Virus record (IMG/VR): IMGVR_UViG_3300009011_000001
Span: 62,001-126,000 of that record
Length of the DNA stretch: 64,000 nucleotides
Reading direction: 5' to 3' (one strand)
Position numbers and translations under genes: made by a program. The notes beneath the pieces were generated by a model. It worked only from the letters and a program-made list of their open reading frames with translations, made no database searches and was not told the DNA's origin. Positions 2,523 through 63,544 of this stretch are shown here, one piece after another. Numbering within the stretch: position 1 is the stretch's first letter; each line of letters opens with the position of its first letter.

Positions 2523-2572
2523 GACATAAGGCCGGCCCGCAGGGGCTGGTTTTATGCCGCATTTTCTTTTTT
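2523..2572 (+). terminator. CATA-hairpin-TATG element with U-tract
   Basis: gacataa-ggccggccc-gca-ggggctggtt-ttatgcc followed by ttttctttttt. Confidence 0.8.
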
Positions 2573-2621
2573 CACTCGATGCACTAATGTTACATACGCC
2601 GAGCCCCATGGATGTAACGAA

Positions 2622-4751
2622 ATGTCAAAGAGTGCGAATCCTTTCATCCGCGATCTGGACGATTACCAGCGCGATATCGATATCCTCCCCGGTGCAAAAG
2701 AACAGATTGCGAAGTATGTAAGCCTACGACTGAAGATTACGTTTGAAGAAGCCTACGAATGGCTTGAGAAAAAGCTGAAAGATCCGCAATGGAAAATTAA
2801 AGACCCAGCAATGGAACGTCTGCTTCGTAAAGGACCCGGCAATCGGGTCGAAGACGAAACGACCTTCCTGCAGTACATCGAAGAGATCATCGACAACAAC
2901 TGGATTCTGTCGCCCGCACTGGTAGCGTATCAGCGTCCTGAAGTTGAGCTGTCTCCGATTGCTGAATGGCAAGAAGATAACATTGCTGCACGTAAGAAAT
3001 CCAAGACCAACATGTTCGTCCTGAAACAGGCCGGTCAGTTGCTCAAGTCTGCTTTGGCGGACTATGACCAGAACGCACGGAAGATTCGGATCAACGCCGT
3101 ATCTGGGCAGCATGGTTCTGAAGCTAACCCGTTGTATCAAGCTACCGGTCACTATAGCCTCACAGCTCTCTGCCGAGCTGCAGCGGGGTACGGTAACGGC
3201 ACCGTTGAACGCTTCCTCACGGGATCTAAACATTATCACACGCCCGAGATAGCCAAGGCGAATCTTGTCGCGATTCTTACCATGGAAGATAAGAGTCGCT
3301 TTCAAGAGGCCATGGATTTCTACGAGCTGACATATCCTGAAGTAGACGACGTGCTGGCAATGGTTGAGCATTCGACCAGCCTGTATTGGAAGTCTCCAGA
3401 AGAGTCTGCCATCATCCGTGATTGCATCACCGGCATGACGCCACTGGAGCGAGCCATTGTTACCTACTCGGGTGACATGTTCCACTTGGCTAAGCACAAC
3501 CCGGACATCATCCGTGAATTCATGGGTGAAATGATTGTCGACAATATCGATGGCATGGAAGATGTCGATACTGACGCTGAGCTGAAAACCATGAACTCCA
3601 CAGATGTTGCGTACATCAACGCCCTGTGTGCTGACGTGATGATCGGTTCCGACCACAAGCGGGTAAAGGCAAACGACCCAGCTGGGTGGCAAGTCATCGG
3701 TAAGACAGCTCGTCGCTTTAAGGACGTGATGCAGCGATTCCAGTTGCTGATCTCGACCTTCTTCGTGCCTCGTCACCTGCCGCCGACTGTGGCTTCTCTG
3801 AAAGGCATTCAGCGCCGCGCTTGCCTGGCAGCAGATACCGACTCCTCCATCTTCACCTGCGAGTCGTGGGTTAAGTGGTATTCGGGCGACTTGAAACGCG
3901 GTCGCACACAAGACCGCATCTGGTACCTGACCACCTACATGGCGTGTCAATGCATTGCGCACTCTTTGGCAATGTTGTCGGCAAACGTCGGTGTGGAAAG
4001 AAAGAACATCTTCCGCTTGGCTATGAAGAACGAGTACGCATTCCCAGTGTTTGCACTCACGAACTTGGCCAAACACTACTTCTCGCTTATTTCTATGCGC
4101 GAAGGTAACGTGTACAAGAAGATGGACTTGGAGATCAAAGGCGTTGAGCTTCGTGGTTCCACTGTGCCAAAGGAAACTTTGGATGCAGCCAAGGACCTGA
4201 TGCAATTCATCCTGAACACTGCAAATGCCGGTGAGAAGATGAACGCCAAGAAGATGCTCACTGAAATTGCTGAGCGTGAGATCGAAACGATTCGTTCGAT
4301 TAAGCGCGGTGAGTACAAGTACCTGAAGTCTGCACAGATCAAGCCGAACAGCGACAAGATCATCCACTTCGAACTCTGGCAAGAAGTGTTTGGTCCAAAG
4401 TACGGCGAATCCGTGCTGCCACCTTTCCCGGTGGTGAAAGTAACAACCGAGCTGACCAACAAGACTCTGATGAAAGAGTGGTTGGAAGGCATCGAAGACA
4501 AAGAGTTGGCTGCACGCATGGTTGCTTGGCTGAACCGCACTGGTCGTGACAAGTTGCCTACCATGTATCTGCCTACTCAGGTTGTTCGAAATTCTGGCCT
4601 GCCAGTAGAGATTCAAGAAGCGGCAAACGTACGCAAGCTCGCTTACCAAATCAACTCCGGCTTCTACCGGATCCTTGAGTCCACAGGTTTGGCTATCGTC
4701 GACCGCAATCACCACCGTCTGGTGTTTGACTTCTTGAGGATGGCGGCATGA
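2622..4751 (+). CDS. Family B DNA polymerase, subunit carrying motifs B and C (phiKZ gp50-like)
   Basis: KIRINAVSG (motif B), AADTDS (motif C), KHYF and IKGVE; likely start MSKSANP at 2622. Confidence 0.9.
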   Translation: MSKSANPFIRDLDDYQRDIDILPGAKEQIAKYVSLRLKITFEEAYEWLEKKLKDPQWKIKDPAMERLLRKGPGNRVEDETTFLQYIEEIIDNNWILSPALVAYQRPEVELSPIAEWQEDNIAARKKSKTNMFVLKQAGQLLKSALADYDQNARKIRINAVSGQHGSEANPLYQATGHYSLTALCRAAAGYGNGTVERFLTGSKHYHTPEIAKANLVAILTMEDKSRFQEAMDFYELTYPEVDDVLAMVEHSTSLYWKSPEESAIIRDCITGMTPLERAIVTYSGDMFHLAKHNPDIIREFMGEMIVDNIDGMEDVDTDAELKTMNSTDVAYINALCADVMIGSDHKRVKANDPAGWQVIGKTARRFKDVMQRFQLLISTFFVPRHLPPTVASLKGIQRRACLAADTDSSIFTCESWVKWYSGDLKRGRTQDRIWYLTTYMACQCIAHSLAMLSANVGVERKNIFRLAMKNEYAFPVFALTNLAKHYFSLISMREGNVYKKMDLEIKGVELRGSTVPKETLDAAKDLMQFILNTANAGEKMNAKKMLTEIAEREIETIRSIKRGEYKYLKSAQIKPNSDKIIHFELWQEVFGPKYGESVLPPFPVVKVTTELTNKTLMKEWLEGIEDKELAARMVAWLNRTGRDKLPTMYLPTQVVRNSGLPVEIQEAANVRKLAYQINSGFYRILESTGLAIVDRNHHRLVFDFLRMAA

Positions 4752-4788
4752 TTGGCTGGACAAAACCATTAGAAAATCAAAAGGAGGC

Positions 4789-5322
4789 GTGATAATGATC
4801 CGCAGTATCAATGAACCGTTTGATGCACTCGAACTGACATTCCCGAATGGGAGTGTGGAAATGTGGAAGAACAGCGCTGAAACCTACGAGCAGTATTACG
4901 AGCGCGTGGCTTACGAACTGAAGACATCCGGCAGTTTCAAAGCTGCCGAGATCTGCAAGGTCCAGATCCTGGTCGGCGCAAGCGCAACCGTTTACGAAGT
5001 GACGGACCCAGATCTTCATCGCGTTATCTGGGAACTTCGCGACCTTTCGATTGCTGCCGATAAGTTCAAAGCGGTCATTACTTTCGAAACGGCCGTTGGC
5101 GAAGAAGGTAGTGAGAAGAAGCCAATCTTCATCGAGGTTTATCTCGTTGCCGATACCCCGGCCGCTGCAATGCGCAAAGCAGCCGATTATCTCGAAACGC
5201 GTCCAGGCACTGTGGTGAAGAATGTAGTTATCCAGCCGATCTATCCGCTGGATAGTAACGCTACCCAGACCTACAGTCTCGAAATGATCCAGACCCCTCA
5301 GGTGTTCACACCACCAGCTTAA
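4789..5322 (+). CDS. Hypothetical protein
   Basis: 177 aa; AGGAGG RBS. Confidence 0.75.
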   Translation: MIMIRSINEPFDALELTFPNGSVEMWKNSAETYEQYYERVAYELKTSGSFKAAEICKVQILVGASATVYEVTDPDLHRVIWELRDLSIAADKFKAVITFETAVGEEGSEKKPIFIEVYLVADTPAAAMRKAADYLETRPGTVVKNVVIQPIYPLDSNATQTYSLEMIQTPQVFTPPA

Positions 5323-5334
5323 AAGAAGCATTGC

Positions 5335-5376
5335 GGCATACAGGCAGGGCGCAAGCCCTGCCTGTCACCTATGTCG
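5335..5376. terminator. Bidirectional hairpin (GCAA loop) with CATA/TATG flanks
   Basis: acaggcagggc-gcaa-gccctgcctgt between convergent genes. Confidence 0.8.
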
Positions 5377-6618: not shown

Positions 6619-6829
6619 ATATTTAGCACGCCTTGTATTTAATCACATGGTAGCGGTATCAGTTGAGCAGCCAATGGCGTGAGCCACTGGGTACCCGGAT
6701 GATGAGCTGGGGAACTTAAGCCCAAACGGATATGGCCGTATCCAGAGTGTTGGGAATTCCTGACGCGATAGGGAACCATTAAAGGCATTTCGCCACAATC
6801 GCAAACTGTGTACACACCAAGGAGTAAGC

Positions 6830-8791: not shown

Positions 8792-8799
8792 GTAGCAGC

Positions 8800-8858
8800 G
8801 GCATAGAGCAGCAGGCGGAGCAATCCGCCTGCTAGCTCACTTTTTCTTTTTATGTTGC
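8800..8858 (+). terminator. Hairpin and U-tract after chmA, with CATA/TATG flanks
   Basis: agcaggcgga-gcaa-tccgcctgct followed by tttttcttttt. Confidence 0.8.
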
Positions 8859-8875
8859 TAGGGGGTTAAGCGAGA

Positions 8876-10375
8876 GTGGAAATAATCACCTATGACATCC
8901 ATGAGCCAAGGCTTCGATACGAAAATCGCACGGGTATTTATCCGTCGATCGTAGACTTCGACGACCTCTATAAGACACTTGAAGTCAAGCCGATTCTGGC
9001 GAACGACATCGATCTGTCTACGGAACAAGGGCGAGATCTTTTCACCCGTCTGGTCTATAGCCGTCACGATGGCGATATGTTCAGTAACGTTCCGTCCTGC
9101 GCCTGCGGGTTTACGACTCGTGGTAGCCGTATCAACACACTCTGTAAAGAATGTGGACAACCGGTACTGCCGCTGACCGAAATGCCCATCCAGCCGATCA
9201 TTTGGATCCGATGTCCTGACAAACTGCCAGGCTTCATGAACCTCATGATCTATCGTCACCTGAAACTCGAGTTTACAAAATCGGGCTTTAGCGCATTGGA
9301 TTACATCATCGATCCAAGCTATCGGGCTCCCAAAGCCGACAGTGACGAAGAAGCCGTGGTTGTAAATATCCTCGGCAACAGCCGCAATCGAGGGCTGAAG
9401 TATTTCCATGACAATTTCGATGACGTCATGGACGCGCTCTGTGCAAGTCGGTTCTACATCAAGACCGCACAGTCGCTGATCGTCAAGAAGTATTTGGCGA
9501 AGTTCAGGCATCTGGTGTTCTGCAAATACCTGCCCTTCCCATCGAAGGTTGGGTTCATCATTGAGAACGTGGGCGAGCGTACGTTTGCCGACCCTCGGAT
9601 GGCACCAGCAATCAGTGCTCTGATCTCGTTGTCCAACGCAGCTTTCGGCAAGAACCTCCCGCTGAAAGATCTGGAGAAGCGTGTCGGTCGTTCGATTGGT
9701 AAGCTTACCCAGTACTACATGGACAATGAAAGCAAGAACCTGTTCGACAAGTCCGGTATCTTCCGGAAGCTTGTCTACGGCACTGACCCGCATTTCAACG
9801 CCCGGACTGTAATTACACCGCTCCATCAGCCGCACAACCATGACTCTATTGAAACCCCTTGGGGTGTCAGTATTCTCATGCTGAAGCTGCACATCGCAAA
9901 CAAGCTACTCAAAGAGGACTACACGCCGAACGAAATCTCGACCCTGATCTACGACAACATCACCCGAACTCAGCCTAAGCTCGAATCGATCATCGATGAG
10001 CTGATTGCAGAAACACCAGGCGGTAAAGGTATCCCCGTAGGCTGGACGCGTTTCCCGGTATTGCTCAGGGGTAGTACGAGCCGTAAGTACATCACGGCAG
10101 TTAAACGTAACCCGACGCAGTTGTCGACCTCTACCAGTCCTCTGACGGTTAACGCCAGTAACGCCGACTTTGACGGTGACTACATGACGATTCAGATGGC
10201 TCTTGATGCCGTGGGCGCAGCAATGTACGACCGCTTGGCCGACCACACTGGCATCATGGATCTTAAGCATCCGTTTAAGATGAGTAACCATGCTGCGATT
10301 CCAGCACCAACGCTGACAACAATCAACGCACGGCTTGAGGAGGGTATTGCAATCTCTCGACCCGTGGAGGTATAA
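8876..10375 (+). CDS. Non-virion RNA polymerase beta'-like N-terminal/catalytic subunit (gp55-like)
   Basis: Zn finger CACG...CKEC and catalytic NADFDGD motif. Confidence 0.92.
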   Translation: MEIITYDIHEPRLRYENRTGIYPSIVDFDDLYKTLEVKPILANDIDLSTEQGRDLFTRLVYSRHDGDMFSNVPSCACGFTTRGSRINTLCKECGQPVLPLTEMPIQPIIWIRCPDKLPGFMNLMIYRHLKLEFTKSGFSALDYIIDPSYRAPKADSDEEAVVVNILGNSRNRGLKYFHDNFDDVMDALCASRFYIKTAQSLIVKKYLAKFRHLVFCKYLPFPSKVGFIIENVGERTFADPRMAPAISALISLSNAAFGKNLPLKDLEKRVGRSIGKLTQYYMDNESKNLFDKSGIFRKLVYGTDPHFNARTVITPLHQPHNHDSIETPWGVSILMLKLHIANKLLKEDYTPNEISTLIYDNITRTQPKLESIIDELIAETPGGKGIPVGWTRFPVLLRGSTSRKYITAVKRNPTQLSTSTSPLTVNASNADFDGDYMTIQMALDAVGAAMYDRLADHTGIMDLKHPFKMSNHAAIPAPTLTTINARLEEGIAISRPVEV

Positions 10376-11023: not shown

Positions 11024-11058
11024 AACATAGGGCCGGCCTTCGGGTCGGCTTTATGCCC
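11024..11058 (+). terminator. CATA-hairpin(TTCG)-TATG element
   Basis: catagggccggcc-ttcg-ggtcggctttatg. Confidence 0.75.
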
Positions 11059-12095: not shown

Positions 12096-12138
12096 GCAGG
12101 AGCCTTCGGGCTCCTGCTACCCGCCTTCTTTTTTTTTT
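12096..12138 (+). terminator. Intrinsic terminator
   Basis: gcaggagcc-ttcg-ggctcctgc followed by a long T run. Confidence 0.8.
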
Positions 12139-13261: not shown

Positions 13262-13304
13262 GGCATACGGAGCAGGCTCGCGCCTGCTCCGTTTCCTTTA
13301 TTTC
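13262..13304 (+). terminator. CATA-hairpin terminator
   Basis: ggcat-acggagcaggc-tcgc-gcctgctccgt followed by a T-rich tail. Confidence 0.75.
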
Positions 13305-13320
13305 ACTTGAGGTTCAGAAC

Positions 13321-16776: not shown

Positions 16777-16830
16777 AACATACAGAAACCCTCAATCGCA
16801 AAACGCTGCGATTGAGGGACTTTATGCCGC
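16777..16830 (+). terminator. CATA-hairpin-TATG element
   Basis: ccctcaatcgca...tgcgattgaggg flanked by cata and tatg. Confidence 0.7.
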
Positions 16831-21490: not shown

Positions 21491-21533
21491 GGCATAAAGA
21501 GGTGGGGGCAACCCCACCTCTCTTGCTCTTTTT
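21491..21533. terminator. CATA-hairpin(GCAA) terminator between convergent genes
   Basis: agaggtgggg-gcaa-ccccacctct followed by a T-rich tail. Confidence 0.8.
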
Positions 21534-21873
21534 AATTTGCCGTTAGACGAGTTCGATAAACCATCTTCATCCTGGCAACTAGATCTTTGTCTGGAATTAG
21601 CAAGGTCCCGATGTTCTCGTTGATTTCGTGCATGGAGTTAATTCCGTTCACACGCATAATCAATTGGTGGTCTTCAAGCTCAACTCCCTGTTCCAGTAAG
21701 TACCCGGCCAGGTCAAACTGAAACAGAAACCCTTCCTCTGGCGCAACGGCAACAGCGCGCGTAGCAGGGTGGGTTCTGAAAAACGTAACCAGTGACTCGA
21801 TGTAAGTGTTGTAATCGCGAGTTGTTGTGTATTCGTCAGGGCTCTCAATACGAAGATTGTCCAGCGCGCTCAT
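21532..21873 (-). CDS. Small protein, possible LysM/gpX/T4 gp53-like baseplate component
   Basis: 113 aa; GAGG RBS; LIMRVNGI...LLIPD pattern. Confidence 0.6.
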   Translation of the reverse strand: MSALDNLRIESPDEYTTTRDYNTYIESLVTFFRTHPATRAVAVAPEEGFLFQFDLAGYLLEQGVELEDHQLIMRVNGINSMHEINENIGTLLIPDKDLVARMKMVYRTRLTAN

Positions 21874-21897
21874 TGTGACCTCGTTAATTTCCAGTCA

Positions 21898-21930: not shown

Positions 21931-24120
21931 ATGGAGTTGCAAATGTCGGATCCGCGATTTCCGATTCACCCTGAGTATGTTTCATTTAACGGGATGAACT
22001 CGTATTTCAAAAACGTGTCACCCGTTCGACAAGTGATGCACACCGGCGCTATGTCCCAAGCGCTGATCGTAGATGGCCGCACCCGTAAGCGTCAGCAATC
22101 GGGTCTGGAACGAGAAATTGCCCGAGGAGCTCTAAACCACACGTTCCGAAACGACGTGATCATTCGAGCCGTAATCCCACGCTTTACTGATGACATGTTC
22201 AGCCACCTTCCCAATGGCCGAACTGCAAACCCGCTCGATCTGGTGATCTTTGAAGATTACCGTACCGAGCAGCTGGACGTCATGGAGCTTTCTAAGTTCC
22301 ACGTCATGCACCAGCACTTTGGTTTCGTGTTCGACATCGACGAAGACATCTATAACCGGATGGCCAACGTCAAAGATGTCATGATTCCAGCAGGCACTTG
22401 TGTGGCTCGCTCTCCGGCCGTTACGCCGGATGGTGACTACATGCCCGGACTCGAAACCAACGTTGTGATGCTGTCTCACCCGGCAACGGATAACGACAGT
22501 ATCATTTTCTCTGAGTCCTACGCGTCAAAGCGTATCCGTTCCAACGCCTTCGAATCTCGTGGGCTGGAATGTGGCCGGCACAAATATCCGATTAACGCTT
22601 ACGGCAATGGCTCGATCTTCAAGCCAATGCCCGATGTAGGCGAGATCATTCATAGCAACGGTCTGCTGATTGCGACTCGTCCTTACGACGAACGCCTCGA
22701 TGCGGTCTACATGACGCGCAAGCAGTTGCTCAAGCCGATCTATTGGCTGGATGATCGAATCGTTGGCCACGCAGGTGCTGAGATTGTTGACATCGAAGTG
22801 ATGCACAACAGTCATCTTGCAAGTCAGCGCTTGCCGGAAGAAATGTCAAGACAGTTCCGCAAGTACTACGACGCCGATCGCCGCTTCTATACGGAGCTGA
22901 TCCGCAATACGGTATTCCGTAGCGGGCGTTGGAATGACAACGTGAACATGTCTGACCGTCTGGCTACTCTGGTCACCATGGCAATCCCTCGTGCCGGTCA
23001 CATGCTGGTCGAAGAGGGAATGTGGCCGAAGAACCAGGCTGATGAACTGGACGTGCGTCTGAACTATCGTGGCGATCTGCTCGATGAGTGGAAGGTGAAA
23101 CTTACCTACCGCTATAAGACAGAAGCAGGCGAGGGTCCAAAGGCTACGGACGAAAACGGCGCTAAAGGCGTTGCATCGTTTGTAATGCCAGACGCCGACA
23201 TGCCGGTCGATGCATTCGGTAACCGTGCTGAGATTGCTGTACTCAGTAACCCGACTGTAAACCGGATGAACCCTGGTCGTCCTCACCAGCAAATGATCGG
23301 CGCTGCCGGTCGTGATGTAATCAAACGTGTTCGCCGCACCTACGGTCTGCCGTCGATGGGCGAAGTCACGAGAGAAGGGGCTGAGCGTGCTGTTTACGAC
23401 AAAGCCAATGCTGAACTGAACTTTAAGAACTTCGCGTACATCGTTGGGTTCTACAAGATCGTCAGCAAAGATCGGATGTACATGTTGGCAACTCGCGATG
23501 ACGTCATCTCTACTGGACGCTATCTGCGACATCTCGTCGAAGTCATTCTTGACGGCAACGGCGAGCATGCTTACGGCATGTACATTCAGAAGGTCCCTGA
23601 GAGCGAAGATAAGCTCGATGAGATCATTGATGCGCTGTACTCTGGCGATTACCGCCCTGAGATGAGCCCGGTTACCTTCCGCGATTACAGCGGCAAAATG
23701 GTGACCACCAAGGAAGATGTGCTGATCGGACCGATCTACCACCTCATCCTGGAAAAGACTGCTACCGATGGCTCTGGCGTGAGTTCTGCGAAGCTTAACC
23801 ACTTCGGCATTACTTCGCGTCTGACCAATGCCGACAAGCACTCAACCGCTGGTCGTCAAACGGTGACTCGTTCTCTCGACGAGGCATCCATCCGGAGCAT
23901 GGCAGCGGCATCTGGCGCTGAAGTCATGGCGCACATCGTTGACCTGCACAACAACCCAGTGGTGCACAAAGCGGTGTGTCGCAACATCATTACGGCCGAT
24001 AAGCCTACCGACATCGATGAACTCGTTGACCGGTCGGTCTTTAAGCTGGGTGGCCACCGGCCGCTTGCGTTTGCAATCAACCAGTTCATTTGCTCAGGCA
24101 AGTTCATCACTCACGACTAA
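21931..24120 (+). CDS. Non-virion RNA polymerase beta-like C-terminal subunit (gp71-73-like, uninterrupted)
   Basis: GPKATDENGAKGV, DMPVD, NRMNPG and IGPIYHLILEK beta-subunit motifs; start may be 21943. Confidence 0.9.
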   Translation: MELQMSDPRFPIHPEYVSFNGMNSYFKNVSPVRQVMHTGAMSQALIVDGRTRKRQQSGLEREIARGALNHTFRNDVIIRAVIPRFTDDMFSHLPNGRTANPLDLVIFEDYRTEQLDVMELSKFHVMHQHFGFVFDIDEDIYNRMANVKDVMIPAGTCVARSPAVTPDGDYMPGLETNVVMLSHPATDNDSIIFSESYASKRIRSNAFESRGLECGRHKYPINAYGNGSIFKPMPDVGEIIHSNGLLIATRPYDERLDAVYMTRKQLLKPIYWLDDRIVGHAGAEIVDIEVMHNSHLASQRLPEEMSRQFRKYYDADRRFYTELIRNTVFRSGRWNDNVNMSDRLATLVTMAIPRAGHMLVEEGMWPKNQADELDVRLNYRGDLLDEWKVKLTYRYKTEAGEGPKATDENGAKGVASFVMPDADMPVDAFGNRAEIAVLSNPTVNRMNPGRPHQQMIGAAGRDVIKRVRRTYGLPSMGEVTREGAERAVYDKANAELNFKNFAYIVGFYKIVSKDRMYMLATRDDVISTGRYLRHLVEVILDGNGEHAYGMYIQKVPESEDKLDEIIDALYSGDYRPEMSPVTFRDYSGKMVTTKEDVLIGPIYHLILEKTATDGSGVSSAKLNHFGITSRLTNADKHSTAGRQTVTRSLDEASIRSMAAASGAEVMAHIVDLHNNPVVHKAVCRNIITADKPTDIDELVDRSVFKLGGHRPLAFAINQFICSGKFITHD

Positions 24121-24134
24121 TCGAGGTATCATCA

Positions 24135-26108
24135 ATGCGTACGTTTCACGTCAGAGAATTCTTTGACAATCCGCAAAGAGATTGGCCGTGTTTGAAAGAT
24201 GAGCTGTTTACCCTGCAGTTGGACGACGGGGAGAAAATCAAGACCGTTACGGCGGCGCTGGAGATCTCCAAGAAGTTGTGGTTGGTCCATGAGAAGTACG
24301 ACCGCCTGCCGATCCTTGCGCGTCACTGTGTGCAAAAGGTACCGATGTCCAATGGCGATATTTCTGCCATTGGCTCGGCGGTAGCCGAAGATATTCACGA
24401 CATCTACGGCATCGGCGGATATAACCGGGAAGAGCTCTGGTGGTATATGCAGCTGAACAACCAGCGGCTGTACAACGAGAGTATCATTGACTATCCTGAG
24501 TACATGAGGGGGTCTAACTCCTTCACGTTCCACGAGGTCTACCAACACCCGGAAATCAAGAAGATTCGGGAAACGCTTTACGATAACCCGACAGCAATCT
24601 CCATTGAGAAAGCGAACGACAAGGCAACGCACGTCATCATGACGGCACCTGACCTTGCGCGTAACGCCATCGTATCTGACCTCCGGGCCAAGATCATCAA
24701 GATGGAGCAGTTCCTGCAGGTCATCCTTGTTCGGGGTTTCAACACCGACATCGATGACGTGATCTATCGCAAGCCGATCATGGGCAACTATTACTCCGGC
24801 ATCAACGACCCTGCTGAAGCGGCCATGGACTCGACCTTGGCTTCCAAAGCGATCATCTATCAAGGTGAGCCGTTGGAGCAAACCGAATACGCCAACCGGA
24901 AGTTGCAGTTCAGTTCACAGCGGGTTGATCTGCTGATCATGAACGACTGTAACTCCCCGGTGTTGGCACCTATCGAAGTGACGCCTGCGCGCTACTCCGA
25001 CATGGAAGGGTTGTACTTCAAAGATCCGGAGACGGGGAACCTCAAGTCCCTGCGTCTGCGTGATCGAAAGAAATACGAAGGCATGACTCTGAGCTTTCGG
25101 TTACCGTTCAATTGCAAGTATCGAGGCAGTGCTTGCGTATGCCGGATGTGTTACGGCGAGCTGGCATTCAACCTGCCTTACGGTGTGAACATCGGCCATG
25201 TGGCTTCCACCATGACTCAGTCGGAAGTATCTCAACGAGTGCTGAAGGTTAAGCACTCCGAGAAGTCGACTGTGGCCGAACGTATCAACATCAACTCCGA
25301 GGAGAAGCCTTACATCGACCATGCTGAAGCGCCGAATATGATTGTTCTCAATCCTAATTTGGCGAAGAATGGCATCAAGTTGTTGCTCAAGGCTGCGGTG
25401 GTTCAGGGCGTGTTCAATGCGTCCAAGATCCCACTGCTCAAGAAGGACCAGATTCGCGAGGACGTTCCGACGTCCAAGTTCAGTCAGTTCCGCAATGTGT
25501 CGTTCGATCTGCCGACTCAAAGCAAACAACCGATGCGGGTGCACGTCACTGTCTCGAGGGGTGGTAACTATTCCTTCCTGACACACGACTTCCTACGGTT
25601 TATGCTTAAAGAACAGTTCACAATCCGGGAAGATGGGTATTATCACATCGACCTGACGAACTGGGATTTCAACAAGCCGGTATTCGAGCTGCCGAACAAA
25701 CATATCTCGATGCGTGACTTCGCTGCTGAAGTTGAGGTGTTCGTTCGTTCCACACGGGATAACTCCAGTCGCCACCTGGGTCGCCTGAAACAGCTGACCC
25801 AATACGCCGACCCAGTGGAAGCAATGCTGGACGCGCATGAACTGATCGCGAGTAAGGTTCCCGTTTCGATGACTCACGTAGCCGTGGTGCTTCTATCCAT
25901 GACTGTGGGCATGGACCGGGACAGCGTCAAGATCCCACCGTTTGGCGAGACTCTGCGTTTCGCTAAGTACGGCAAGATCCTGGCGAACGGTAGCTACGGT
26001 GCGCTGTTTGCGTACCAAGGCGCCAATGCGGTAATGGACAAGATGGAGCAGTTCCTGATTGTAGATAGGATGCAACATTTGCTCGATCCGATGATCATGC
26101 CAAATTAA
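24135..26108 (+). CDS. Non-virion RNA polymerase beta'-like C-terminal subunit (gp74-like)
   Basis: TEYANRKLQ bridge-helix-like segment, C..VCRMCYG Zn site, SQRVLKVKH trigger-loop-like segment; GAGG RBS before ATG 24135. Confidence 0.9.
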   Translation: MRTFHVREFFDNPQRDWPCLKDELFTLQLDDGEKIKTVTAALEISKKLWLVHEKYDRLPILARHCVQKVPMSNGDISAIGSAVAEDIHDIYGIGGYNREELWWYMQLNNQRLYNESIIDYPEYMRGSNSFTFHEVYQHPEIKKIRETLYDNPTAISIEKANDKATHVIMTAPDLARNAIVSDLRAKIIKMEQFLQVILVRGFNTDIDDVIYRKPIMGNYYSGINDPAEAAMDSTLASKAIIYQGEPLEQTEYANRKLQFSSQRVDLLIMNDCNSPVLAPIEVTPARYSDMEGLYFKDPETGNLKSLRLRDRKKYEGMTLSFRLPFNCKYRGSACVCRMCYGELAFNLPYGVNIGHVASTMTQSEVSQRVLKVKHSEKSTVAERININSEEKPYIDHAEAPNMIVLNPNLAKNGIKLLLKAAVVQGVFNASKIPLLKKDQIREDVPTSKFSQFRNVSFDLPTQSKQPMRVHVTVSRGGNYSFLTHDFLRFMLKEQFTIREDGYYHIDLTNWDFNKPVFELPNKHISMRDFAAEVEVFVRSTRDNSSRHLGRLKQLTQYADPVEAMLDAHELIASKVPVSMTHVAVVLLSMTVGMDRDSVKIPPFGETLRFAKYGKILANGSYGALFAYQGANAVMDKMEQFLIVDRMQHLLDPMIMPN

Positions 26109-26117
26109 CCAGTAAAG

Positions 26118-28290: not shown

Positions 28291-28291
28291 A

Positions 28292-28343
28292 CGGCATACA
28301 GCCCGGCGCAATGCCGGGCTGTATGCCGCACTTCTTTTTTTTT
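28292..28343. terminator. Bidirectional CATA-hairpin-TATG element
   Basis: cggcatacagcccggc-gcaat-gccgggctgtatgccg followed by a T-tract. Confidence 0.85.
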
Positions 28344-28345
28344 TG

Positions 28346-34890: not shown

Positions 34891-34892
34891 AC

Positions 34893-34929
34893 GACATAGA
34901 CCCCGGCACTGAGCCGGGGTCTATGCTGT
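34893..34929. terminator. Bidirectional CATA-hairpin-TATG element
   Basis: catagaccccggc-actga-gccggggtctatg between convergent genes. Confidence 0.85.
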
Positions 34930-40180: not shown

Positions 40181-40187
40181 CCAAAGC

Positions 40188-40226
40188 GACATACAGCCCG
40201 GCCATTGCGGCCGGGCTGTATGCTGT
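40188..40226. terminator. Bidirectional CATA-hairpin-TATG element
   Basis: catacagcccggcc-attgc-ggccgggctgtatg. Confidence 0.85.
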
Positions 40227-43175
40227 TTACGTGCGAGAAGTGTGACGACGGAAGTTGACCTCGATGCCATCAACAACTGCGTACGAGCCATCCGGCTGGT
40301 AGGTCAGAGACTTAGCCAAGCACAGACGAGAAGTTTCATCCAGCAGCGTGATGATGTTGAAGTTGTTCTCTTCACCACCAAGACCGCTCAAGTCAGCGCT
40401 GATCATGTCCTCGCCCAACACTTCACGAACAGAAGCTTCGAGAGCATCGCGAGCAATCTCAACGCCGTCAAGGCCATCGACAATCTTCTGAATAGCTGCC
40501 TTCTCCATGGCATCGCGCAGATCGTTGTCGGCGTAGACTTCTTTCGTAACGTAGATGTCGAGTTTCAGGAACTGAGCCGTGTGCAGAGTAATCCGCTGAC
40601 TATCCTCAACCAGACATTCGACAAACTTCAGCGTGTTGCGAGGCTGGAAGAAGATCTCGGTCTCATCGAGGGTTGCTTTGCGGATAGGGCCCAGCGTGTC
40701 ATTGATCCATTCCACAAGGATCTTCGGCACCTCACGACGGTACGACACATCGTTTACGTCAGATGCGTAGCGGTAGACGCCGTCGAACAGCACGATGTCC
40801 CACCAACGAATGACGTTACGTTCGGACTCCATGATTGGGTTGCCATGCTCATCCATGATGGCAGAACCTTTCTCATGCAGAACAATCGGCTGACCATCCG
40901 AGTTGATCTTCTGCGTGCCTTTTGCATACTGGATCTTCAGACGTTTAACGCCATCTACCTCTTCGATGATTGGCATCTTGGTCACTGGGTCTTTTTCGTA
41001 AACGTCCACATCCCAGAAAGCAAACACATCGGCAGGGTAGGTCAGGAACTTACGCAGACCGATCATGCTTCGTGCCATTGCCCACAGGCCGGTGAGTTCG
41101 TCACCGAAATGGAGGCGCAGGGTTTCGTAGTAAACGCCTACGGTATTGTCAGGCAGAAGGAATTTCCCCAGCACGTCATCGACGACACCACGTTCAAACC
41201 CAGGGACTGTGTAATCAGACACCGACCAGATGACAGACATGTCGTTGATCAACGGCGTTGGGTAGTCGCGTTCAATCGGTTCGAACATGTTGAAGTTGGT
41301 GGTGATCAAACGATGCTCGTCGACATTGACAACCTCGACGTCCCAACGCGATTTCACCACAAACTCAAACACACGCTCACCGCCATCGCCAACGATTTGC
41401 GTGCCGTTGATGTACGCCAGAGATTTCTCACCTGGAGGCATGTACGCCATCTGCACATGCACCTGATCGTCACGCAGGGCTTTCCACACATCGTTGGAAA
41501 TCGACTGAATGCGAATCACGAAGCCATCGTCGGTGTAGGTGATCGAACGGGTCGTGCTACTGCTGATGGTCAGGCCGAGGGTATCGTTGCTGCCCTTGTA
41601 CGAACTGGACTCGATCTCAGGAGCGGAGAAGAAATAAGGCCGCGCCCTGAAACTGTTGTTCGTCGTATCCAGCACGTAATGCAGAGGCGTGTAGAGATAC
41701 GTGCCATCGCTCACAGTGTTCACCAGAGCGTCGCCAGACAGCGCTGCCAGTTTGGCAAGGTCATCATCGGAAACAATGGTTAAAATGCCGTCAATGTAAC
41801 GATAGAGCGTTTTAGGCAACACTGTGAGGCGCTGCCCATTGTCGATGATGGTGGAGTGCGTCAACAAATCCGTAATGCTAGACTTGTAGGTCACCACCGC
41901 CGTATCGATCCCCGTCGTTACTTGCCCTTGAGTGTTGTCGGGCATTGCGCGAGTGGCGAGGTAGGTCCGATGGCTGAGGTCATCGATGTTCATCGAAGCT
42001 TCAAAGCCCAGCGTGCTCAATGCAGTGCCAACCTGAGCGTTGCTGATCGGGAGAACCTGCGGACCTGTAGCGTTCGTTTGAATGCGCTGACGACGTTCGG
42101 CAAACGTTGGAGCATTTGCACCACCGCTGGCAATGTCGCTACTGGCTACAGTGATGGTGCTCATCTGTGCCAATGGAGCGATGTAGATGTTGTTCTCGTC
42201 GTTATCGAGGTCACGCCAGTTGCTGATGTACGATGCCGGAGTCAGACCACCCAATGCCAAGTTCAATGGACCCTTGGTGGTGTAGACGTCAACCCGGATA
42301 TCGTGAGTCACCAAGCTGGTGGCGTAGTACACGTACGGCAGCTCAATAGTCAGCTGATTATCAGCCACGGTAAGTAGCAGGGTCGGATCAGTTGGATCGA
42401 ACGACTGTTGGCTGTGGGTCGTCTTGATCTCTTTCCAAACGCCCTGATTGTTGTTGACGAAAGCTCGACCGTAGTAGAACGAATCAGTCAACGGAACAGT
42501 GGTCAGCAGAACCTTCGAACCTACCAGACTGTACTTGTAGGTCGTCAGCAACATCTGCTTCAACTTAGTACGAACTCGGATCAGGCGAACAGGACCCTTG
42601 TTGTTCTCAGTGATGAAGACCGTGACCGGTTCCCAGTCGACCTTGTTACCCGCCAGAGATTGCAGCGGGGAAGGCTGACTGCCGTCGTAGACCACATCGA
42701 TTGCACCGTGGGCCTTGACGATGAAGTTGATCGGGTACTGGAACGTGAACGTCATTCCGTTCGTGGTGATCTGCGAGTAGCGCGGCAGAACCAAACGACG
42801 GGTAGACGTATCACCCACCTTAACCGCGTACTTCAGAATTTCTTCTTCGGCGATATAGATGTCGAACCATGCACTGCCCGGAGATGCGAACATCCCTTCA
42901 TAGTCAACGTCAGATGCGTGCAGGTAGATCTCTTCTTCCGACTGAGCCGTTTCAGGATACTGGCGCCGGTCAAGGTTCTCGTCTTCCTGAATAGCAGCGT
43001 AACCGGTCAGGATCGAAACCTCTTCCAGATAAGGAAAAGGCATCGAAGGATCGAGCACCATGTCTTCGCCATCGAACAACCGGTTCGTGTAGTTGGCAAT
43101 CAGAACTGACAGGCGAGTGGGCTCGTAACGGACGGCTGCCATGTCAGCCAGAATTTCAGCACTTGTAATCGTCAT
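40227..43175 (-). CDS. Large virion tail/baseplate protein (gp87-like)
   Basis: 982 aa; beta-rich; ASGGANAPTFAERR segment reminiscent of baseplate wedge proteins; synteny. Confidence 0.75.
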   Translation of the reverse strand: MTITSAEILADMAAVRYEPTRLSVLIANYTNRLFDGEDMVLDPSMPFPYLEEVSILTGYAAIQEDENLDRRQYPETAQSEEEIYLHASDVDYEGMFASPGSAWFDIYIAEEEILKYAVKVGDTSTRRLVLPRYSQITTNGMTFTFQYPINFIVKAHGAIDVVYDGSQPSPLQSLAGNKVDWEPVTVFITENNKGPVRLIRVRTKLKQMLLTTYKYSLVGSKVLLTTVPLTDSFYYGRAFVNNNQGVWKEIKTTHSQQSFDPTDPTLLLTVADNQLTIELPYVYYATSLVTHDIRVDVYTTKGPLNLALGGLTPASYISNWRDLDNDENNIYIAPLAQMSTITVASSDIASGGANAPTFAERRQRIQTNATGPQVLPISNAQVGTALSTLGFEASMNIDDLSHRTYLATRAMPDNTQGQVTTGIDTAVVTYKSSITDLLTHSTIIDNGQRLTVLPKTLYRYIDGILTIVSDDDLAKLAALSGDALVNTVSDGTYLYTPLHYVLDTTNNSFRARPYFFSAPEIESSSYKGSNDTLGLTISSSTTRSITYTDDGFVIRIQSISNDVWKALRDDQVHVQMAYMPPGEKSLAYINGTQIVGDGGERVFEFVVKSRWDVEVVNVDEHRLITTNFNMFEPIERDYPTPLINDMSVIWSVSDYTVPGFERGVVDDVLGKFLLPDNTVGVYYETLRLHFGDELTGLWAMARSMIGLRKFLTYPADVFAFWDVDVYEKDPVTKMPIIEEVDGVKRLKIQYAKGTQKINSDGQPIVLHEKGSAIMDEHGNPIMESERNVIRWWDIVLFDGVYRYASDVNDVSYRREVPKILVEWINDTLGPIRKATLDETEIFFQPRNTLKFVECLVEDSQRITLHTAQFLKLDIYVTKEVYADNDLRDAMEKAAIQKIVDGLDGVEIARDALEASVREVLGEDMISADLSGLGGEENNFNIITLLDETSRLCLAKSLTYQPDGSYAVVDGIEVNFRRHTSRT

Positions 43176-43178
43176 TTA

Positions 43179-44249: not shown

Positions 44250-44310
44250 AAACCAGCCTCACTAAGTTGCAAATTCGTTTGAACACAAAATCGGGGTATG
44301 AGGAGAAACG

Positions 44311-45576: not shown

Positions 45577-45602
45577 TCACTTCCTGAAGAGCACCTAAAC
45601 TC

Positions 45603-48434: not shown

Positions 48435-48472
48435 AACATAGAGCCGGGCTTCGTGCCCGGCTCTATGCTGTT
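48435..48472 (+). terminator. CATA-hairpin-TATG element
   Basis: catagagccgggc-ttcgt-gcccggctctatg. Confidence 0.8.
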
Positions 48473-50988: not shown

Positions 50989-51025
50989 CCATAGAGGGAG
51001 GGGTCAGCGACCCTTCCCTCTATGA
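50989..51025 (+). terminator. CATA-hairpin-TATG element
   Basis: catagagggaggggtc-agc-gacccttccctctatg. Confidence 0.8.
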
Positions 51026-56117: not shown

Positions 56118-56131
56118 ATAAAATAGGGTCA

Positions 56132-56146
56132 CACATTACGTCCTTG
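56132..56146 (+). promoter_or_regulatory. Putative early promoter CACATTAC-N5-TG
   Basis: Variant of the motif at 6604, 16870 and 21898. Confidence 0.55.
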
Positions 56147-57382: not shown

Positions 57383-57436
57383 GGCATACACCGGCTCCCA
57401 TCAGGGAGCCGGTGTATGTTGCTTTCTTTTTTTTTT
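57383..57436. terminator. Bidirectional CATA-hairpin-TATG element
   Basis: catacaccggctccc-atca-gggagccggtgtatg followed by a T-tract. Confidence 0.85.
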
Positions 57437-58685
57437 ACTTGGCAGCGGCCTTGAACGTCTTCAGAGAAGCGTCGCAATGCTGAGCGGCTTTGGAGCAGGC
57501 GCCAGACAGCAGGGGCAGCACTTTGCGTGGACCGGTCATGACGTCACTCATCAGAGCGCTGGCCAGCTTCACAACGTTACCGTTGATTGGCTTCTCGCCA
57601 CCTTTGATCGCCGTTTCCATTTTCTTCTTGGTCGCGTCGATCTCAGCTTTGCCTGCCTGGAAGCGTTTCATTTCCTTGTCGATATCGTCGGCAATGGATT
57701 TGATCTCATCGGCCGTTTCGTTGATCTCGCTCAGGGTGAGTACTTTGGCTTCGAGATCGCGAGCAGGTTTGGACGTGATCTTGATTTCAAAGCGGTCGAG
57801 ATGTTCGGCATTGCGCTGAACCAGTACGACGTAACCACCGCGCCAGTCGCCGTTGTATTTCGCCAGAGCTGGAGACAACAGAGACTTGAGCGATTCGTTC
57901 AGACTATGCAGATCGTCGTGGGAACTCTGATCCATACTGGCGAAGTTGCCTTCGGCCATTTCAGTCACGGAGTTCAGGTAGTTGGTGTACCATTCCTTGG
58001 TAAAGCCCAAGGACTTGGTAGCCATGTCCTTCAGCGCCTGAACTGGACCGGTCATGATGTGCTGAGCGCCACCGCCGATGTGGGAAGCCAGATAGCTGAC
58101 CCATGGACCGGTGAGTGGTTTGTCGGCTTTCGATTCCAGATGATCAGCCTGAGCCTTGGTAACACGAGCCTTCAGGTTCTCTGCGGTCTTGCGCATGGCG
58201 CCAGTGGAACGACCGAGGAATGCGGTGAAGTTCTGGATGTTGTCCCAGAGCTTGGTCAGCATTTCCAGGAACGAAGCCCACAGACGTTTGATCACGCCTT
58301 CAGACTTGCCCTTGGTTTCGTTGCGGTTTTCTTCGTTGGTCTGGGTTTTACCAGCAGCCTCGAAAGAAGCGCAGAACACTTCGGCAGGAACCGCCACGCC
58401 GCAGGTCTTCAGAATGGAGCGCATCCCGATTTCGTACTGGTGCGCCATCCGTGGGTTCCAGTTCTCGGTGCTCACTTGCTCCAGGAACCGGGTGGTGTAG
58501 CTTTCGACGGAGGCGGCGGCATTGCCGAGTTCTTCGACGTTGCGGCTGATTTCGTTGACCTGGTCGGAGGCTTCAACGATAGCGGTGGTAGAAGCAACGA
58601 TGTCGTCCATCACTACTTCGGTAGGGCTGTCTTCCAGGATCGCATCGGCTGCTGCGACCTCGAGCGGGTTTGGATGAACGATCAT
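57435..58685 (-). CDS. Internal head protein paralogue
   Basis: 416 aa; SVE, STE and SFE sites; GVIKRLW helix after the propeptide. Confidence 0.8.
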   Translation of the reverse strand: MIVHPNPLEVAAADAILEDSPTEVVMDDIVASTTAIVEASDQVNEISRNVEELGNAAASVESYTTRFLEQVSTENWNPRMAHQYEIGMRSILKTCGVAVPAEVFCASFEAAGKTQTNEENRNETKGKSEGVIKRLWASFLEMLTKLWDNIQNFTAFLGRSTGAMRKTAENLKARVTKAQADHLESKADKPLTGPWVSYLASHIGGGAQHIMTGPVQALKDMATKSLGFTKEWYTNYLNSVTEMAEGNFASMDQSSHDDLHSLNESLKSLLSPALAKYNGDWRGGYVVLVQRNAEHLDRFEIKITSKPARDLEAKVLTLSEINETADEIKSIADDIDKEMKRFQAGKAEIDATKKKMETAIKGGEKPINGNVVKLASALMSDVMTGPRKVLPLLSGACSKAAQHCDASLKTFKAAAK

Positions 58686-61227: not shown

Positions 61228-61264
61228 TATAAAGCAGGAGGTCCGAAGACCCCCTGCGGTATGA
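61228..61264 (-). terminator. CATA-hairpin(TTCG) element on the minus strand
   Basis: Minus strand reads cataccgcagggggtc-ttcg-gacctcctgcttt. Confidence 0.7.
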
Positions 61265-62560: not shown

Positions 62561-62679
62561 TCCATTCCCCTAACTGTTTAATAGATCTTTGGTTGTTCGC
62601 CGCAGTAAAAATAGAGTAGTCAATAATAACCCTGATACCCAGTCGTATGACCACCACATAAGATCGAAGGTTACCCTAC

Positions 62680-63108
62680 ATGATAGACTTTCTGTTGGCC
62701 GACTTTATGTTTGATGCGCCTCTAGATAAGTACGTCGACACCGCGATCACTTACCAACTCGAGGACATCAGGTTCGACGTTACTGAGTACGGGAATCTTC
62801 AGCCAACGTGCATCCTCTACAACGACAGTACCGATCCGGACCCAACCACATTTGTCCAGTTGCCCAATATCGACGTCTTGTTTAAGAAACGTCTATTGAT
62901 TGGCGATATTGTTGACCATGATCTGAACCTGATCACTAGACCTGAGGATGCGTCGCCAGTACCCATCCCTAGGTGTTGCAAGCGTTGCGGGTTTAAGTTG
63001 TCCATTACCCATCAGAGAAAACTGATCATCAAATGTTTATACTGTCAACGGCAGAAGGAACGCCTAAATGAGTTTCCGTTTACTGAGTCCCGTCGGAATC
63101 ATTCCTAA
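62680..63108 (+). CDS. Hypothetical protein with C-terminal Zn ribbon
   Basis: 142 aa; CKRC...CLYC. Confidence 0.65.
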   Translation: MIDFLLADFMFDAPLDKYVDTAITYQLEDIRFDVTEYGNLQPTCILYNDSTDPDPTTFVQLPNIDVLFKKRLLIGDIVDHDLNLITRPEDASPVPIPRCCKRCGFKLSITHQRKLIIKCLYCQRQKERLNEFPFTESRRNHS

Positions 63109-63505
63109 GGGCTCACTCATCGGCATGAGCGTTAACATGATGGGGACTGCAGGTACTGGACTTGCACTCTCTATCAGGGAACATCAACGATCTGTGTTTG
63201 ATCAGTACGTGAAAGCTTGCAGGCGAGGGACTATCAATACCGACACCATTGTCCTCGATGGTCTGCATCAGAAACTTCTATTGATGCCTATTAAAACGGG
63301 CTGTGTAAGTCATCCATCTCTGGAGATCATTGAAACATCTATTAAACGGTTGTGGCTCTACATGACCGAGAACAATATCGATACCGTCTATCTTCCAAAG
63401 CTGGGTTGTTCTGAAGGCCCACGCAGTCTTGATTTTGATGAGGACATCATTCCTTTACTTACGAAATACTTCCTCGATACCGACTTTACGATCTACATCT
63501 ATTAA
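63068..63505 (+). CDS. Macrodomain protein, TARG1/DarG-like ADP-ribose hydrolase fold
   Basis: SVNMMGTAGTGLA, LMPIK, SLEIIETSI and YLPKLGC match the macrodomain pattern (N..G.MG.G.A / FPTK / P.LGCG). Confidence 0.7.
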   Translation: MSFRLLSPVGIIPKGSLIGMSVNMMGTAGTGLALSIREHQRSVFDQYVKACRRGTINTDTIVLDGLHQKLLLMPIKTGCVSHPSLEIIETSIKRLWLYMTENNIDTVYLPKLGCSEGPRSLDFDEDIIPLLTKYFLDTDFTIYIY

Positions 63506-63506
63506 C

Positions 63507-63544
63507 GACATACAGCCAGCCCATAGGGGCTGGCTGTATGCTGT
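63507..63544 (+). terminator. CATA-hairpin-TATG element
   Basis: catacagccagccc-atag-gggctggctgtatg. Confidence 0.8.

What the first reader, a model, noticed from the sequence alone, without database searches (positions are those of the whole stretch)
2523..63544. Family of about 15 intergenic hairpins with variable stems but conserved CATA and/or TATG flanks
Seen: CATA lies shortly after a stop codon and 5' of a GC-rich hairpin at 2525, 5337, 8802, 11026, 13264, 16779, 21493, 28295, 34895, 40190, 48437, 50990, 57385 and 63509, and on the minus strand at 61260. Most copies also have TATG on the 3' side. Stems and loops differ while the tetramer is fixed, even where it is separated from the stem by unpaired bases (5337, 8802, 16779), and several copies lack a U-tract. 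Established: TATG is the phiKZ late-promoter core recognised by nvRNAP/gp68. Inference: this is a sequence-specific cis element rather than a plain terminator. It could be a phage-RNAP-specific terminator, a hairpin/cruciform-assisted late promoter (firing antisense at convergent junctions), or an mRNA 3'-end tag for processing or nuclear export.
Basis: partly seen in the sequence, partly recalled or inferred. Interest (0 to 1): 0.72.

Follow-up and report, generated by a model that had tools for sequence, protein, structure and literature searches.

The report
PhiKZ-type two-way transcription terminators
The repeated CATA-hairpin-TATG elements are real, but they match a terminator signal already mapped by RNA sequencing in the giant phages phiKZ and 201phi2-1, found here in an uncultured soil relative, so the finding is solid but not new.

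Summary
The window is part of a 248.6-kb nucleus-forming (phiKZ-like) jumbo phage from a rhizosphere metagenome. Fourteen of the 15 listed sites are genuine GC-rich hairpins flanked by CATA and/or TATG, and about 40 such elements occur genome-wide, against about zero in shuffled sequence.

CATA and TATG are reverse complements and usually form the outer four base pairs of the stem. The conserved unit is a hairpin followed by TATG-Y-Y-G-T. This matches the phiKZ terminator motif (GC hairpin plus TTATKYYGT) that ONT-cappable-seq defined at 61 terminator regions. PhiKZ copies also carry the 5' CATA arm.

Context points to termination:
- The element sits at 18 of 22 convergent gene junctions, on both strands at 15 of them.
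- It sits at 0 of 21 divergent junctions.
- It lies a fixed ~37 nt after the upstream stop codon.

Orthologous copies in a 237-kb relative keep the tetramers while the stems change by compensatory substitutions. CATA is therefore best read as the mirror image of the tail for the opposite strand, making a two-way terminator.

A promoter, cruciform or export-tag role is not supported, although a secondary restart role at tandem junctions is not excluded. No transcript data exist for this phage. Verdict: new member of a known kind, modest interest.

The parts
2525..2560 (.). CATA-hairpin-TTTATGCCGC after gene 2126-2518(+), at a tandem junction. The mirror tail TATGTCGT lies on the minus strand.
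   Evidence: -27.6 kcal/mol. The ortholog in G001 keeps CATA/TATGCCGC with a changed stem. Three G.U pairs on the + strand.
5337..5373 (.). Hairpin at the convergent junction between 4795-5322(+) and 5369-6451(-). The minus-strand tail TATGCCGC abuts the stem. The plus-strand TATG lies 5 nt beyond it.
8802..8854 (.). Hairpin after the chimallin gene 6830-8791(+). The minus-strand tail is TATGCCGC. The plus strand has a T-rich run followed by TATGTTGC at 8851.
   Evidence: Conserved in G001 with stem substitutions.
11026..11055 (.). CATA-hairpin-TTTATGCCC after gene 10376-10996(+).
   Evidence: The G001 ortholog is CATAACGCCAGCC..GGCTGGCGTTATG.
13264..13305 (.). Hairpin after gene 12627-13253(+). 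The sense tail is TTTCCTTTATTTC (the K=T form of the motif). The antisense tail is TATGCCGT.
16779..16830 (.). CATA, a 6-nt internal loop, a 12-bp hairpin, then actTTATGCCGC, after gene 16005-16754(+).
   Evidence: Both tetramers are conserved in G001.
21493..21540 (.). Convergent junction between 20199-21488(+) and 21532-21873(-). The minus-strand tail is TTATGCCGT. The plus-strand tail is T-rich.
28292..28345 (.). Perfect 16-bp palindrome CGGCATACAGCCCGGC..GCCGGGCTGTATGCCG at a convergent junction, followed by T10 on the + strand.
34891..34929 (.). Palindrome at the convergent junction between 34528-34890(+) and 34932-36257(-). Tails are TATGCTGT (+) and TATGTCGT (-). No T run.
40184..40228 (.). 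Palindrome at the convergent junction between 39953-40180(+) and 40227-43175(-).
   Evidence: G001 shows the compensatory change CAG/CTG to AAG/CTT.
48437..48471 (.). CATA-hairpin-TATGCTGT after gene 47071-48417(+), at a tandem junction.
50990..51024 (.). 16-bp CATA..TATG hairpin after gene 49682-50980(+), 17 nt before the next start codon.
57383..57437 (.). Palindrome at the convergent junction between 57026-57379(+) and 57435-58685(-), followed by T10 on the + strand.
   Evidence: The G001 ortholog changes CACCGGCTCCC to CATCCGCTCCC, with compensation.
63505..63544 (.). acgaCATA-hairpin-TATGctgt after gene 63068-63505(+).
61234..61263 (-). Weak or doubtful member. A 10-bp hairpin between two minus-strand genes, with CATA unpaired and a sense tail TTTATAG.
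   Evidence: The tetramer is not conserved in G001.
12096..12138 (+). Second terminator class, for comparison. GC hairpin with a UUCG loop, an 11-nt spacer and T10, with no tetramer.
8876..10375 (+). Homolog of the phiKZ non-virion RNA polymerase subunit gp55. Part of the enzyme presumed to read the signal.
   Evidence: tblastn E 1e-54.
21943..26108 (+). Two adjacent split RNA polymerase beta/beta' genes, corresponding to phiKZ gp71-73 and gp74.
   Evidence: PHROG 3295 and 3015, E 1e-152 and 1e-136. tblastn to phiKZ 071-073.

Best explanation
These elements are the factor-independent transcription terminators typical of phiKZ-like (nucleus-forming) jumbo phages.

Proposed mechanism:
1. The phage's own multisubunit RNA polymerase transcribes past a stop codon.
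2. The nascent RNA folds into a GC-rich hairpin.
3. A conserved tail, U-A-U-G-Y-Y-G-U, follows the hairpin and takes the place of the usual U-tract. The transcript is released in or just after this tail.

The 5' CATA is the reverse complement of the same tail on the other strand. Two consequences follow:
- The element terminates transcription arriving from either direction. This is why nearly every convergent gene pair has one.
- The hairpin can extend into the tail, which should help pull the RNA out of the RNA:DNA hybrid.

Shown here: sequence, structure, covariation, genomic context, and identity of the motif with experimentally mapped phiKZ terminators.

Inferred: that termination actually occurs at these sites in this phage, which polymerase responds, and how the tail acts.
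For: 1. The host genome is a chimallivirus. It encodes chimallin, split RNA polymerase beta/beta' genes, and gp55- and gp123-like subunits.
2. The 3' logo over 63 units whose upstream gene runs in the same direction is [C/G]T[G]TATG[C/T][C/T]GT[T]. The published phiKZ terminator motif is BCCYCCCCHWWDGGGRRGGBYTTATKYYGT, found at 61 terminator regions by ONT-cappable-seq (PMC10914365). The 201phi2-1 motif A (n=59) resembles it, and adding motif B elongates the hairpin (PMC11512511).
3. PhiKZ DNA has the same two-sided form, for example aacagCATAaGCCCTCCC..GGGAGGGCatTATGtcgt. So do DT01, Burkholderia FLC9, Xanthomonas Xoo-sp14 and Erwinia pEa_SNUABM_54.
4. Context:
   - 18 of 22 convergent junctions carry it, 15 on both strands.
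   - 0 of 21 divergent junctions carry it.
   - 36 of 245 tandem junctions carry it.
   - Stop codon to TATG: median 37 nt, IQR 33.5-47.5.
   - TATG to the next start codon: 13-264 nt.
5. Structure is under selection. Nine of 13 consensus pairs show double compensatory changes. Orthologs in a syntenic relative keep the tetramers while the stems change.
6. Non-Watson-Crick pairs at tandem junctions favour G.U on the sense strand, 28 against 14, with no bias in coding hairpins, 34 against 37. This points to an RNA hairpin.
Against: - There are no transcript 3' ends for this phage. No RNA run holds it, and contigs of relatives gave no end information.
- The tail is less U-rich than in phiKZ. Position -1 is mostly G, and K is almost always G.
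- In most copies the tail is drawn into the stem, so the physical mechanism may differ from a U-tract terminator.
- Eight tandem junctions carry the tail only on the antisense strand, and 12 carry it on both strands. This needs an extra assumption, such as blocking antisense transcription or copying of whole palindromes.
- Some copies also have a T8-10 run 8-14 nt downstream, whose role is unknown.
Confidence: 0.8

Rival explanations
1. Dual-function element. The hairpin terminates upstream transcription, and the adjacent TATG is also a late-type promoter core (G = +1) that restarts transcription of the next gene. At convergent junctions it would fire antisense RNA.
For: - TATG is the phiKZ late-promoter core, read on the single-stranded non-template strand.
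- This genome has a gp123 homolog.
- TATG and CATA are strongly counter-selected inside genes on both strands, with observed/expected 0.39 and 0.41 against synonymous shuffles. This suits a minimal signal.
- 31 tandem units lie 13-264 nt upstream of a gene running in the same direction.
Against: - 0 of 21 divergent junctions carry the element, while 18 of 22 convergent junctions do. There a promoter would only make antisense RNA.
- Its position is fixed relative to the upstream stop codon, not the downstream start.
- P119L has no hairpin, and its TATG is followed by TAGA, not YYGT.
- TATGs without hairpins exist upstream of genes, mostly followed by A, T or G rather than YYGT.
Confidence: 0.1
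2. RNA 3'-end tag. The CAUA/UAUG-closed hairpin is bound by a phage protein for mRNA stabilisation, processing or export from the phage nucleus. Termination would be secondary.
For: - The tetramers stay conserved even where they are unpaired (5337, 8802, 16779).
- G.U pairs are biased to the sense strand.
- Nucleus-forming phages must export mRNA (general knowledge).
Against: - No data link any protein to the element.
- The same motif marks transcript 3' ends in phiKZ, where it was interpreted as an intrinsic terminator.
- The mirror symmetry at convergent junctions is explained more simply by two-way termination.
Confidence: 0.07
3. DNA-level palindrome, acting as a cruciform or a binding site for a dimeric DNA-binding protein, nuclease or recombinase.
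For: Perfect 13-17-bp palindromes with invariant outer tetramers.
Against: - Stem sequences vary and covary, so no fixed duplex sequence is available beyond 4 bp.
- One-sided copies have G.U pairs that would be A.C mismatches on the other strand.
- Placement strictly at gene 3' ends.
Confidence: 0.03

Closest known systems
PhiKZ conserved intrinsic terminator motif, 5'-BCCYCCCCHWWDGGGRRGGBYTTATKYYGT-3' (Putzeys et al. 2024, Microlife, PMC10914365)
   Same: - GC-rich stem-loop followed by TATKYYGT.
- Location at gene 3' ends.
- Two-way copies between convergent genes.
- Phage with its own split multisubunit RNA polymerases.
- PhiKZ copies also carry the 5' (aacRR)CATA arm.
   Different: - Stem sequences differ: CAGCCCGGC-type here, GCCCTCCC in phiKZ.
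- K is almost always G.
- The base before TATG is mostly G or C rather than T, so the tail is less U-rich.
- The tetramer is usually inside a 13-17-bp stem.
- There is no transcript mapping for this phage.
201phi2-1 terminator motifs A and A/B (PMC11512511)
   Same: Motif A resembles the phiKZ motif. Adding motif B elongates the hairpin, as the 5' CATA arm does here. Fifteen bidirectional termination sites were reported.
   Different: The motif sequences appear only in figures that I could not read, so the equivalence of motif B with the CATA arm is inferred.
Bidirectional intrinsic terminators of bacteria (A-tract, hairpin, U-tract) - from general knowledge
   Same: The 5' flank is the complement of the 3' tail, so one hairpin serves both strands at convergent genes and the stem can extend into the tail.
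   Different: The tail is a specific heteropolymer (UAUGYYGU) rather than a U run. Many copies fail a 5-of-8-T criterion on one or both strands.
PhiKZ late promoter core TATG, G = +1 (PMC4666361; PMC12809450)
   Same: The same tetramer, in a genome encoding homologs of the polymerase that reads it.
   Different: The context is a gene 3' end with a preceding hairpin and a YYGT extension. The element is absent from divergent junctions. P119L has no hairpin.

Membership tests
PhiKZ-type conserved terminator (GC hairpin + TTATKYYGT) | GC-rich stem-loop | tested here: met
   Stems of 9-17 bp, -21 to -39 kcal/mol. Nine of 13 consensus pairs show compensatory changes.
PhiKZ-type conserved terminator (GC hairpin + TTATKYYGT) | 3' tail TTATKYYGT directly after the stem | tested here: met
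   Logo over 63 units, taking T of TATG as position 0: TATG invariant by selection of the units, position +4 Y in 61 of 63, +5 Y in 60 of 63, +6 G in 47 of 63, +7 T in 41 of 63. Deviation: position -1 is T in only 12 of 63.
PhiKZ-type conserved terminator (GC hairpin + TTATKYYGT) | Lies at the 3' end of genes in the direction of transcription, and is two-way between convergent genes | tested here: met
   18 of 22 convergent junctions, 0 of 21 divergent. Stop codon to TATG median 37 nt.
PhiKZ-type conserved terminator (GC hairpin + TTATKYYGT) | Carried by a phiKZ-like phage with its own multisubunit RNA polymerases | tested here: met
   Chimallin and split beta/beta' genes. gp55 and gp123 homologs.
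PhiKZ-type conserved terminator (GC hairpin + TTATKYYGT) | Transcript 3' ends map to the element | not testable with these tools
   No RNA run holds the phage. The runs that hit hold only relatives, as contigs.
Canonical bacterial intrinsic terminator | U-tract (at least 5 T in 8) starting 0-2 nt after the stem | tested here: not met
   In window 26000-45999, each of the three palindromes passes on one strand only. The + strand fails at 34895 and 40190, and the - strand at 28295. 48437, 50990 and 63509 have no T run.
PhiKZ late promoter (TATG, G = +1) | Positioned upstream of the gene it drives, including at divergent junctions | tested here: not met
   0 of 21 divergent junctions carry the hairpin-linked element, while 18 of 22 convergent junctions do.
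PhiKZ late promoter (TATG, G = +1) | Primary 5' end at the G of TATG | not testable with these tools
   No transcript data.

The most novel reading that the evidence does not exclude
The terminator tail may work through the polymerase's promoter-recognition pocket. In this reading, the elongating enzyme reaches TATG and the single-stranded non-template TATG docks under the beta-lobe of the gp123-like subunit, as it does at late promoters. This would cause a sequence-specific pause. The GC core of the hairpin ends 6-7 nt upstream of that G, which is the classic distance for hairpin-driven release. The outer CAUA/UAUG pairs would then zip up and strip the RNA from the hybrid.

One tetramer would then serve as start signal and stop signal for these polymerases, and possibly as a restart site at tandem junctions. 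This would also explain why TATG is purged from coding sequence on both strands.
Probability: 0.15. Interest if true: 0.65.

Novelty: new member of a known kind. Interest (0 to 1): 0.3.

Why it matters
It gives a reliable way to mark transcription-unit ends in uncultured nucleus-forming jumbo phages, where ordinary terminator predictors miss many sites because there is no U-tract.

The motif survives across phages with only about 30% identity in their polymerases and with genome GC content from 37 to 58%. This implies that the tail is read in a sequence-specific way by the phage transcription machinery.

The tail contains the same tetramer as the late promoter core, and that tetramer is depleted about 2.5-fold inside genes. 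Together these raise a testable question: is one recognition pocket used for both starting and stopping?

Tried and rejected
- **Transcript data.** Two run searches found only DNA metagenomes holding the phage (rhizosphere and soil). The RNA-labelled runs hold relatives of about 88% identity. Laying their contigs on 6800-9000 gave no end information, and one contig simply bridges the terminator.
- **Supplementary tables.** The TSS/TTS tables of the phiKZ and 201phi2-1 papers are not held. I therefore could not check whether any phiKZ TSS coincides with a terminator TATG.
- **Rfam.** No family matches in the window.
- **Nucleotide search.** Megablast against GenBank phages found nothing. The nearest named phage has only about 35% amino-acid identity.
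- **Hairpin-independent TATG promoters.** TATG is about 6-8 times denser upstream of genes than inside them. Counts at divergent junctions are not asymmetric (18 sense, 19 antisense) and no extended motif emerged, so this is suggestive only.
- **First hairpin criterion.** My first loose criterion gave only 4-fold enrichment because of a 4-6% background. I replaced it with stricter tests.
- **Window 26117-26164.** The TATG after this hairpin contains the start codon of gene 26162, so I did not count it as a member.
- **Bacillus phage AR9 as out-group.** It was uninformative, with only 2 GC-rich hairpins in 45 kb.
- **Covariance model.** None was built. Anchored pair counts and RNAalifold already showed covariation.
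Full report
**What the window is.** The window is bases 62001-126000 of a 248,574-bp virus record with direct terminal repeats and 52% GC. It encodes:
- a nuclear-shell (chimallin) protein at 6830-8791;
- two adjacent split RNA polymerase beta/beta' genes at 21943-26108;
- two DNA polymerase genes;
- homologs of the phiKZ non-virion polymerase subunits gp55 (window 8933-10177) and gp123 (genome 215672-217129).

The nearest named phage, Pseudomonas phage pPa_SNUABM_DT01, shares only about 35% identity in the polymerase, and phiKZ about 29%. The DNA comes from a rhizosphere metagenome.

Genome-wide, about 40 palindromes of the form CATA-[C/G]AG-GC core-loop-GC core-CT[C/G]-TATG exist. Three tests exclude chance:
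- The window has 13 perfect stems of 10 bp or more, against 0.47 in dinucleotide shuffles. Six carry CATA, against none in shuffles.
- Hairpins chosen without regard to sequence have TATG at their 3' base in 36 of 59 intergenic cases, but in only 2 of 33 coding cases.
- TATG[CT][CT]GT is intergenic in 42 of 47 occurrences, although only 8.9% of the genome is intergenic.

Some details need correction:
- CATA and TATG are reverse complements and normally form the outer four pairs of the stem.
- The conserved flanks extend to aacRRCATA...TATGYYGTt.
- Site 61260 is weak. Its tetramer is unpaired and is not conserved in the relative.

**Where the elements sit.** I oriented each hairpin+TATG unit by strand, which gave 95 units, 85 of them intergenic. 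At the level of junctions:
- 18 of 22 convergent junctions carry the element, 15 on both strands.
- 36 of 245 tandem junctions carry it: 16 sense only, 12 on both strands, 8 antisense only.
- None of the 21 divergent junctions carries it.

The distance from the upstream stop codon to TATG is tight (median 37 nt, IQR 33.5-47.5). The distance to the next start codon in the same direction is loose (13-264 nt). This is the signature of a signal that ends transcription units, not one that starts them.

**Structure is selected, and so is the tetramer.** A 237-kb relative, IMGVR_UViG_3300014205_000172, has a chimallin 79% identical in protein. It is syntenic with the window at 64-84% nucleotide identity in the flanking stretches that aligned.

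At orthologous junctions the tetramers and the YYGT tail are kept while the stems change with compensation:
- 40190: CAG/CTG becomes AAG/CTT.
- 28295: CAGCCCGGC becomes CACCTCCGGC.
- 57385: CACCGGCTCCC becomes CATCCGCTCCC.

RNAalifold on 20 units from three phages gave 13 consensus pairs, 9 with double compensatory changes. The invariance of the four outer pairs in that alignment comes from how the units were selected.

At tandem junctions, non-Watson-Crick pairs favour G.U on the sense strand (28 against 14), while coding hairpins show no bias (34 against 37). This is modest support for an RNA hairpin rather than a DNA cruciform.

**What it is.** ONT-cappable-seq of phiKZ found 133 termination regions. 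Sixty-one predicted intrinsic terminators share the motif 5'-BCCYCCCCHWWDGGGRRGGBYTTATKYYGT-3', a GC hairpin followed by TTATKYYGT. Six bidirectional terminators lie between convergent genes (PMC10914365). In 201phi2-1, 59 terminators carry a closely similar motif A. A second motif B elongates the hairpin, and 15 sites are bidirectional (PMC11512511).

The 3' logo here, [C/G]T[G]TATG[C/T][C/T]GT[T], is that motif. I then looked at phiKZ DNA directly. Many of its terminators have the same two-sided form, including the outer flank, for example aacagCATAaGCCCTCCCattgcGGGAGGGCatTATG and aaacgaCATAttGCCCTCCC...tttatttcgt.

The same architecture, far above the density expected from TATG frequency, occurs in DT01, Burkholderia phage FLC9, Xanthomonas phage Xoo-sp14 and Erwinia phage pEa_SNUABM_54. 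The element is therefore a family-wide feature of nucleus-forming jumbo phages, and the finding is a new instance of it.

**How it most likely works.**
1. The phage polymerase transcribes the hairpin.
2. The tail UAUGYYGU replaces the U-tract.
3. The RNA is released in or just after the tail. This step is inferred from the phiKZ mapping.

The 5' CATA is the complement of the tail needed on the other strand, just as bacterial two-way terminators pair an A-tract with a U-tract. It also lets the stem extend into the tail.

Many copies fail a simple U-tract test on one or both strands.

**The promoter idea.** TATG is indeed the phiKZ late-promoter core with G as +1 (PMC4666361). The 2026 structure assigns its recognition to the beta-like subunit GP123, acting on the opened non-template strand, not to gp68 (PMC12809450).

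The evidence here is against a promoter as the main role:
- The element is absent from divergent junctions and present at convergent ones.
- The model promoter P119L has no hairpin, and its TATG is followed by TAGA.
- TATGs without hairpins occur upstream of genes.

A secondary restart function at tandem junctions cannot be excluded without 5'-end data.

**An additional observation: TATG is depleted.** TATG/CATA is the second most depleted tetramer in the genome, with observed/expected 0.55 under a second-order Markov model. Inside genes it is depleted on both strands relative to synonymous-codon shuffles:
- TATG 0.39, z = -18.8.
- CATA 0.41, z = -10.7.
- Controls TATC, TGTA and TACA lie between 0.90 and 1.12.

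The depletion also appears in the relative (0.64), in DT01 (0.53) and, more weakly, in phiKZ (0.80). This suggests that the tetramer is costly wherever it occurs.

It motivates the speculative model in the novel-case field. There, the non-template TATG docks in the promoter pocket and pauses the elongating enzyme 6-7 nt after the GC core, which is the right geometry for hairpin-driven release.

**Limits.**
- No transcript data exist for this phage.
- The supplementary TSS/TTS tables of the two key papers were not available.
- Gene calls are my own.

**Verdict.** The terminator reading is supported by homology to mapped terminators and by context. The promoter, cruciform and export readings are not supported. 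The element is a new member of a known kind.

Noticed in passing
window 12129-12138, 28335-28344, 57427-57436 (and 34397-34405 inside a gene); genome-wide list: Runs of 7 or more T: 16 in the whole genome, all on the + strand and none on the - strand. Fifteen are intergenic. Each lies 0-14 nt after a hairpin, usually as (C)TTC-T8-10-G. At six convergent junctions only the + strand has one. This may be a second, strand-specific terminator flavour or another signal.
   Followed up: partly
window 21893-21902, 56127-56136, 63569-63578; 14 intergenic sites genome-wide: The motif AGTCACACAT (up to 1 mismatch) is preceded by an A/T-rich stretch. All intergenic copies are on the + strand, most of them 44-107 nt upstream of + strand genes, including the RNA polymerase gene at 21943. 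It is a candidate early (virion-polymerase) promoter.
   Followed up: partly
whole genome; also L010-L013, L014, L005-L006: TATG/CATA is counter-selected inside genes on both strands, with observed/expected about 0.4 against synonymous-codon shuffles. Only CTAG is more depleted genome-wide. The depletion is shared with the relative and DT01 and is weaker in phiKZ.
   Followed up: yes
L015, L016, L017 (Burkholderia FLC9, Xanthomonas Xoo-sp14, Erwinia pEa_SNUABM_54): The two-sided CATA-hairpin-TATG architecture recurs in chimalliviruses of several host genera with 48-58% GC. It is therefore not specific to phiKZ or 201phi2-1.
   Followed up: partly
window 12096-12117, 26671-26693 and others genome-wide: Many hairpins without the tetramer have UUCG tetraloops, while the CATA/TATG palindromes mostly have 4-5-nt GCAA- or ATTGC-type loops.
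   Followed up: no
window 6800-8907: Contigs about 88% identical to the chimallin region occur in wastewater and other public runs. A second soil metagenome holds 85% of the sampled words of window 26000-32000, so this phage lineage recurs in the environment.
   Followed up: no
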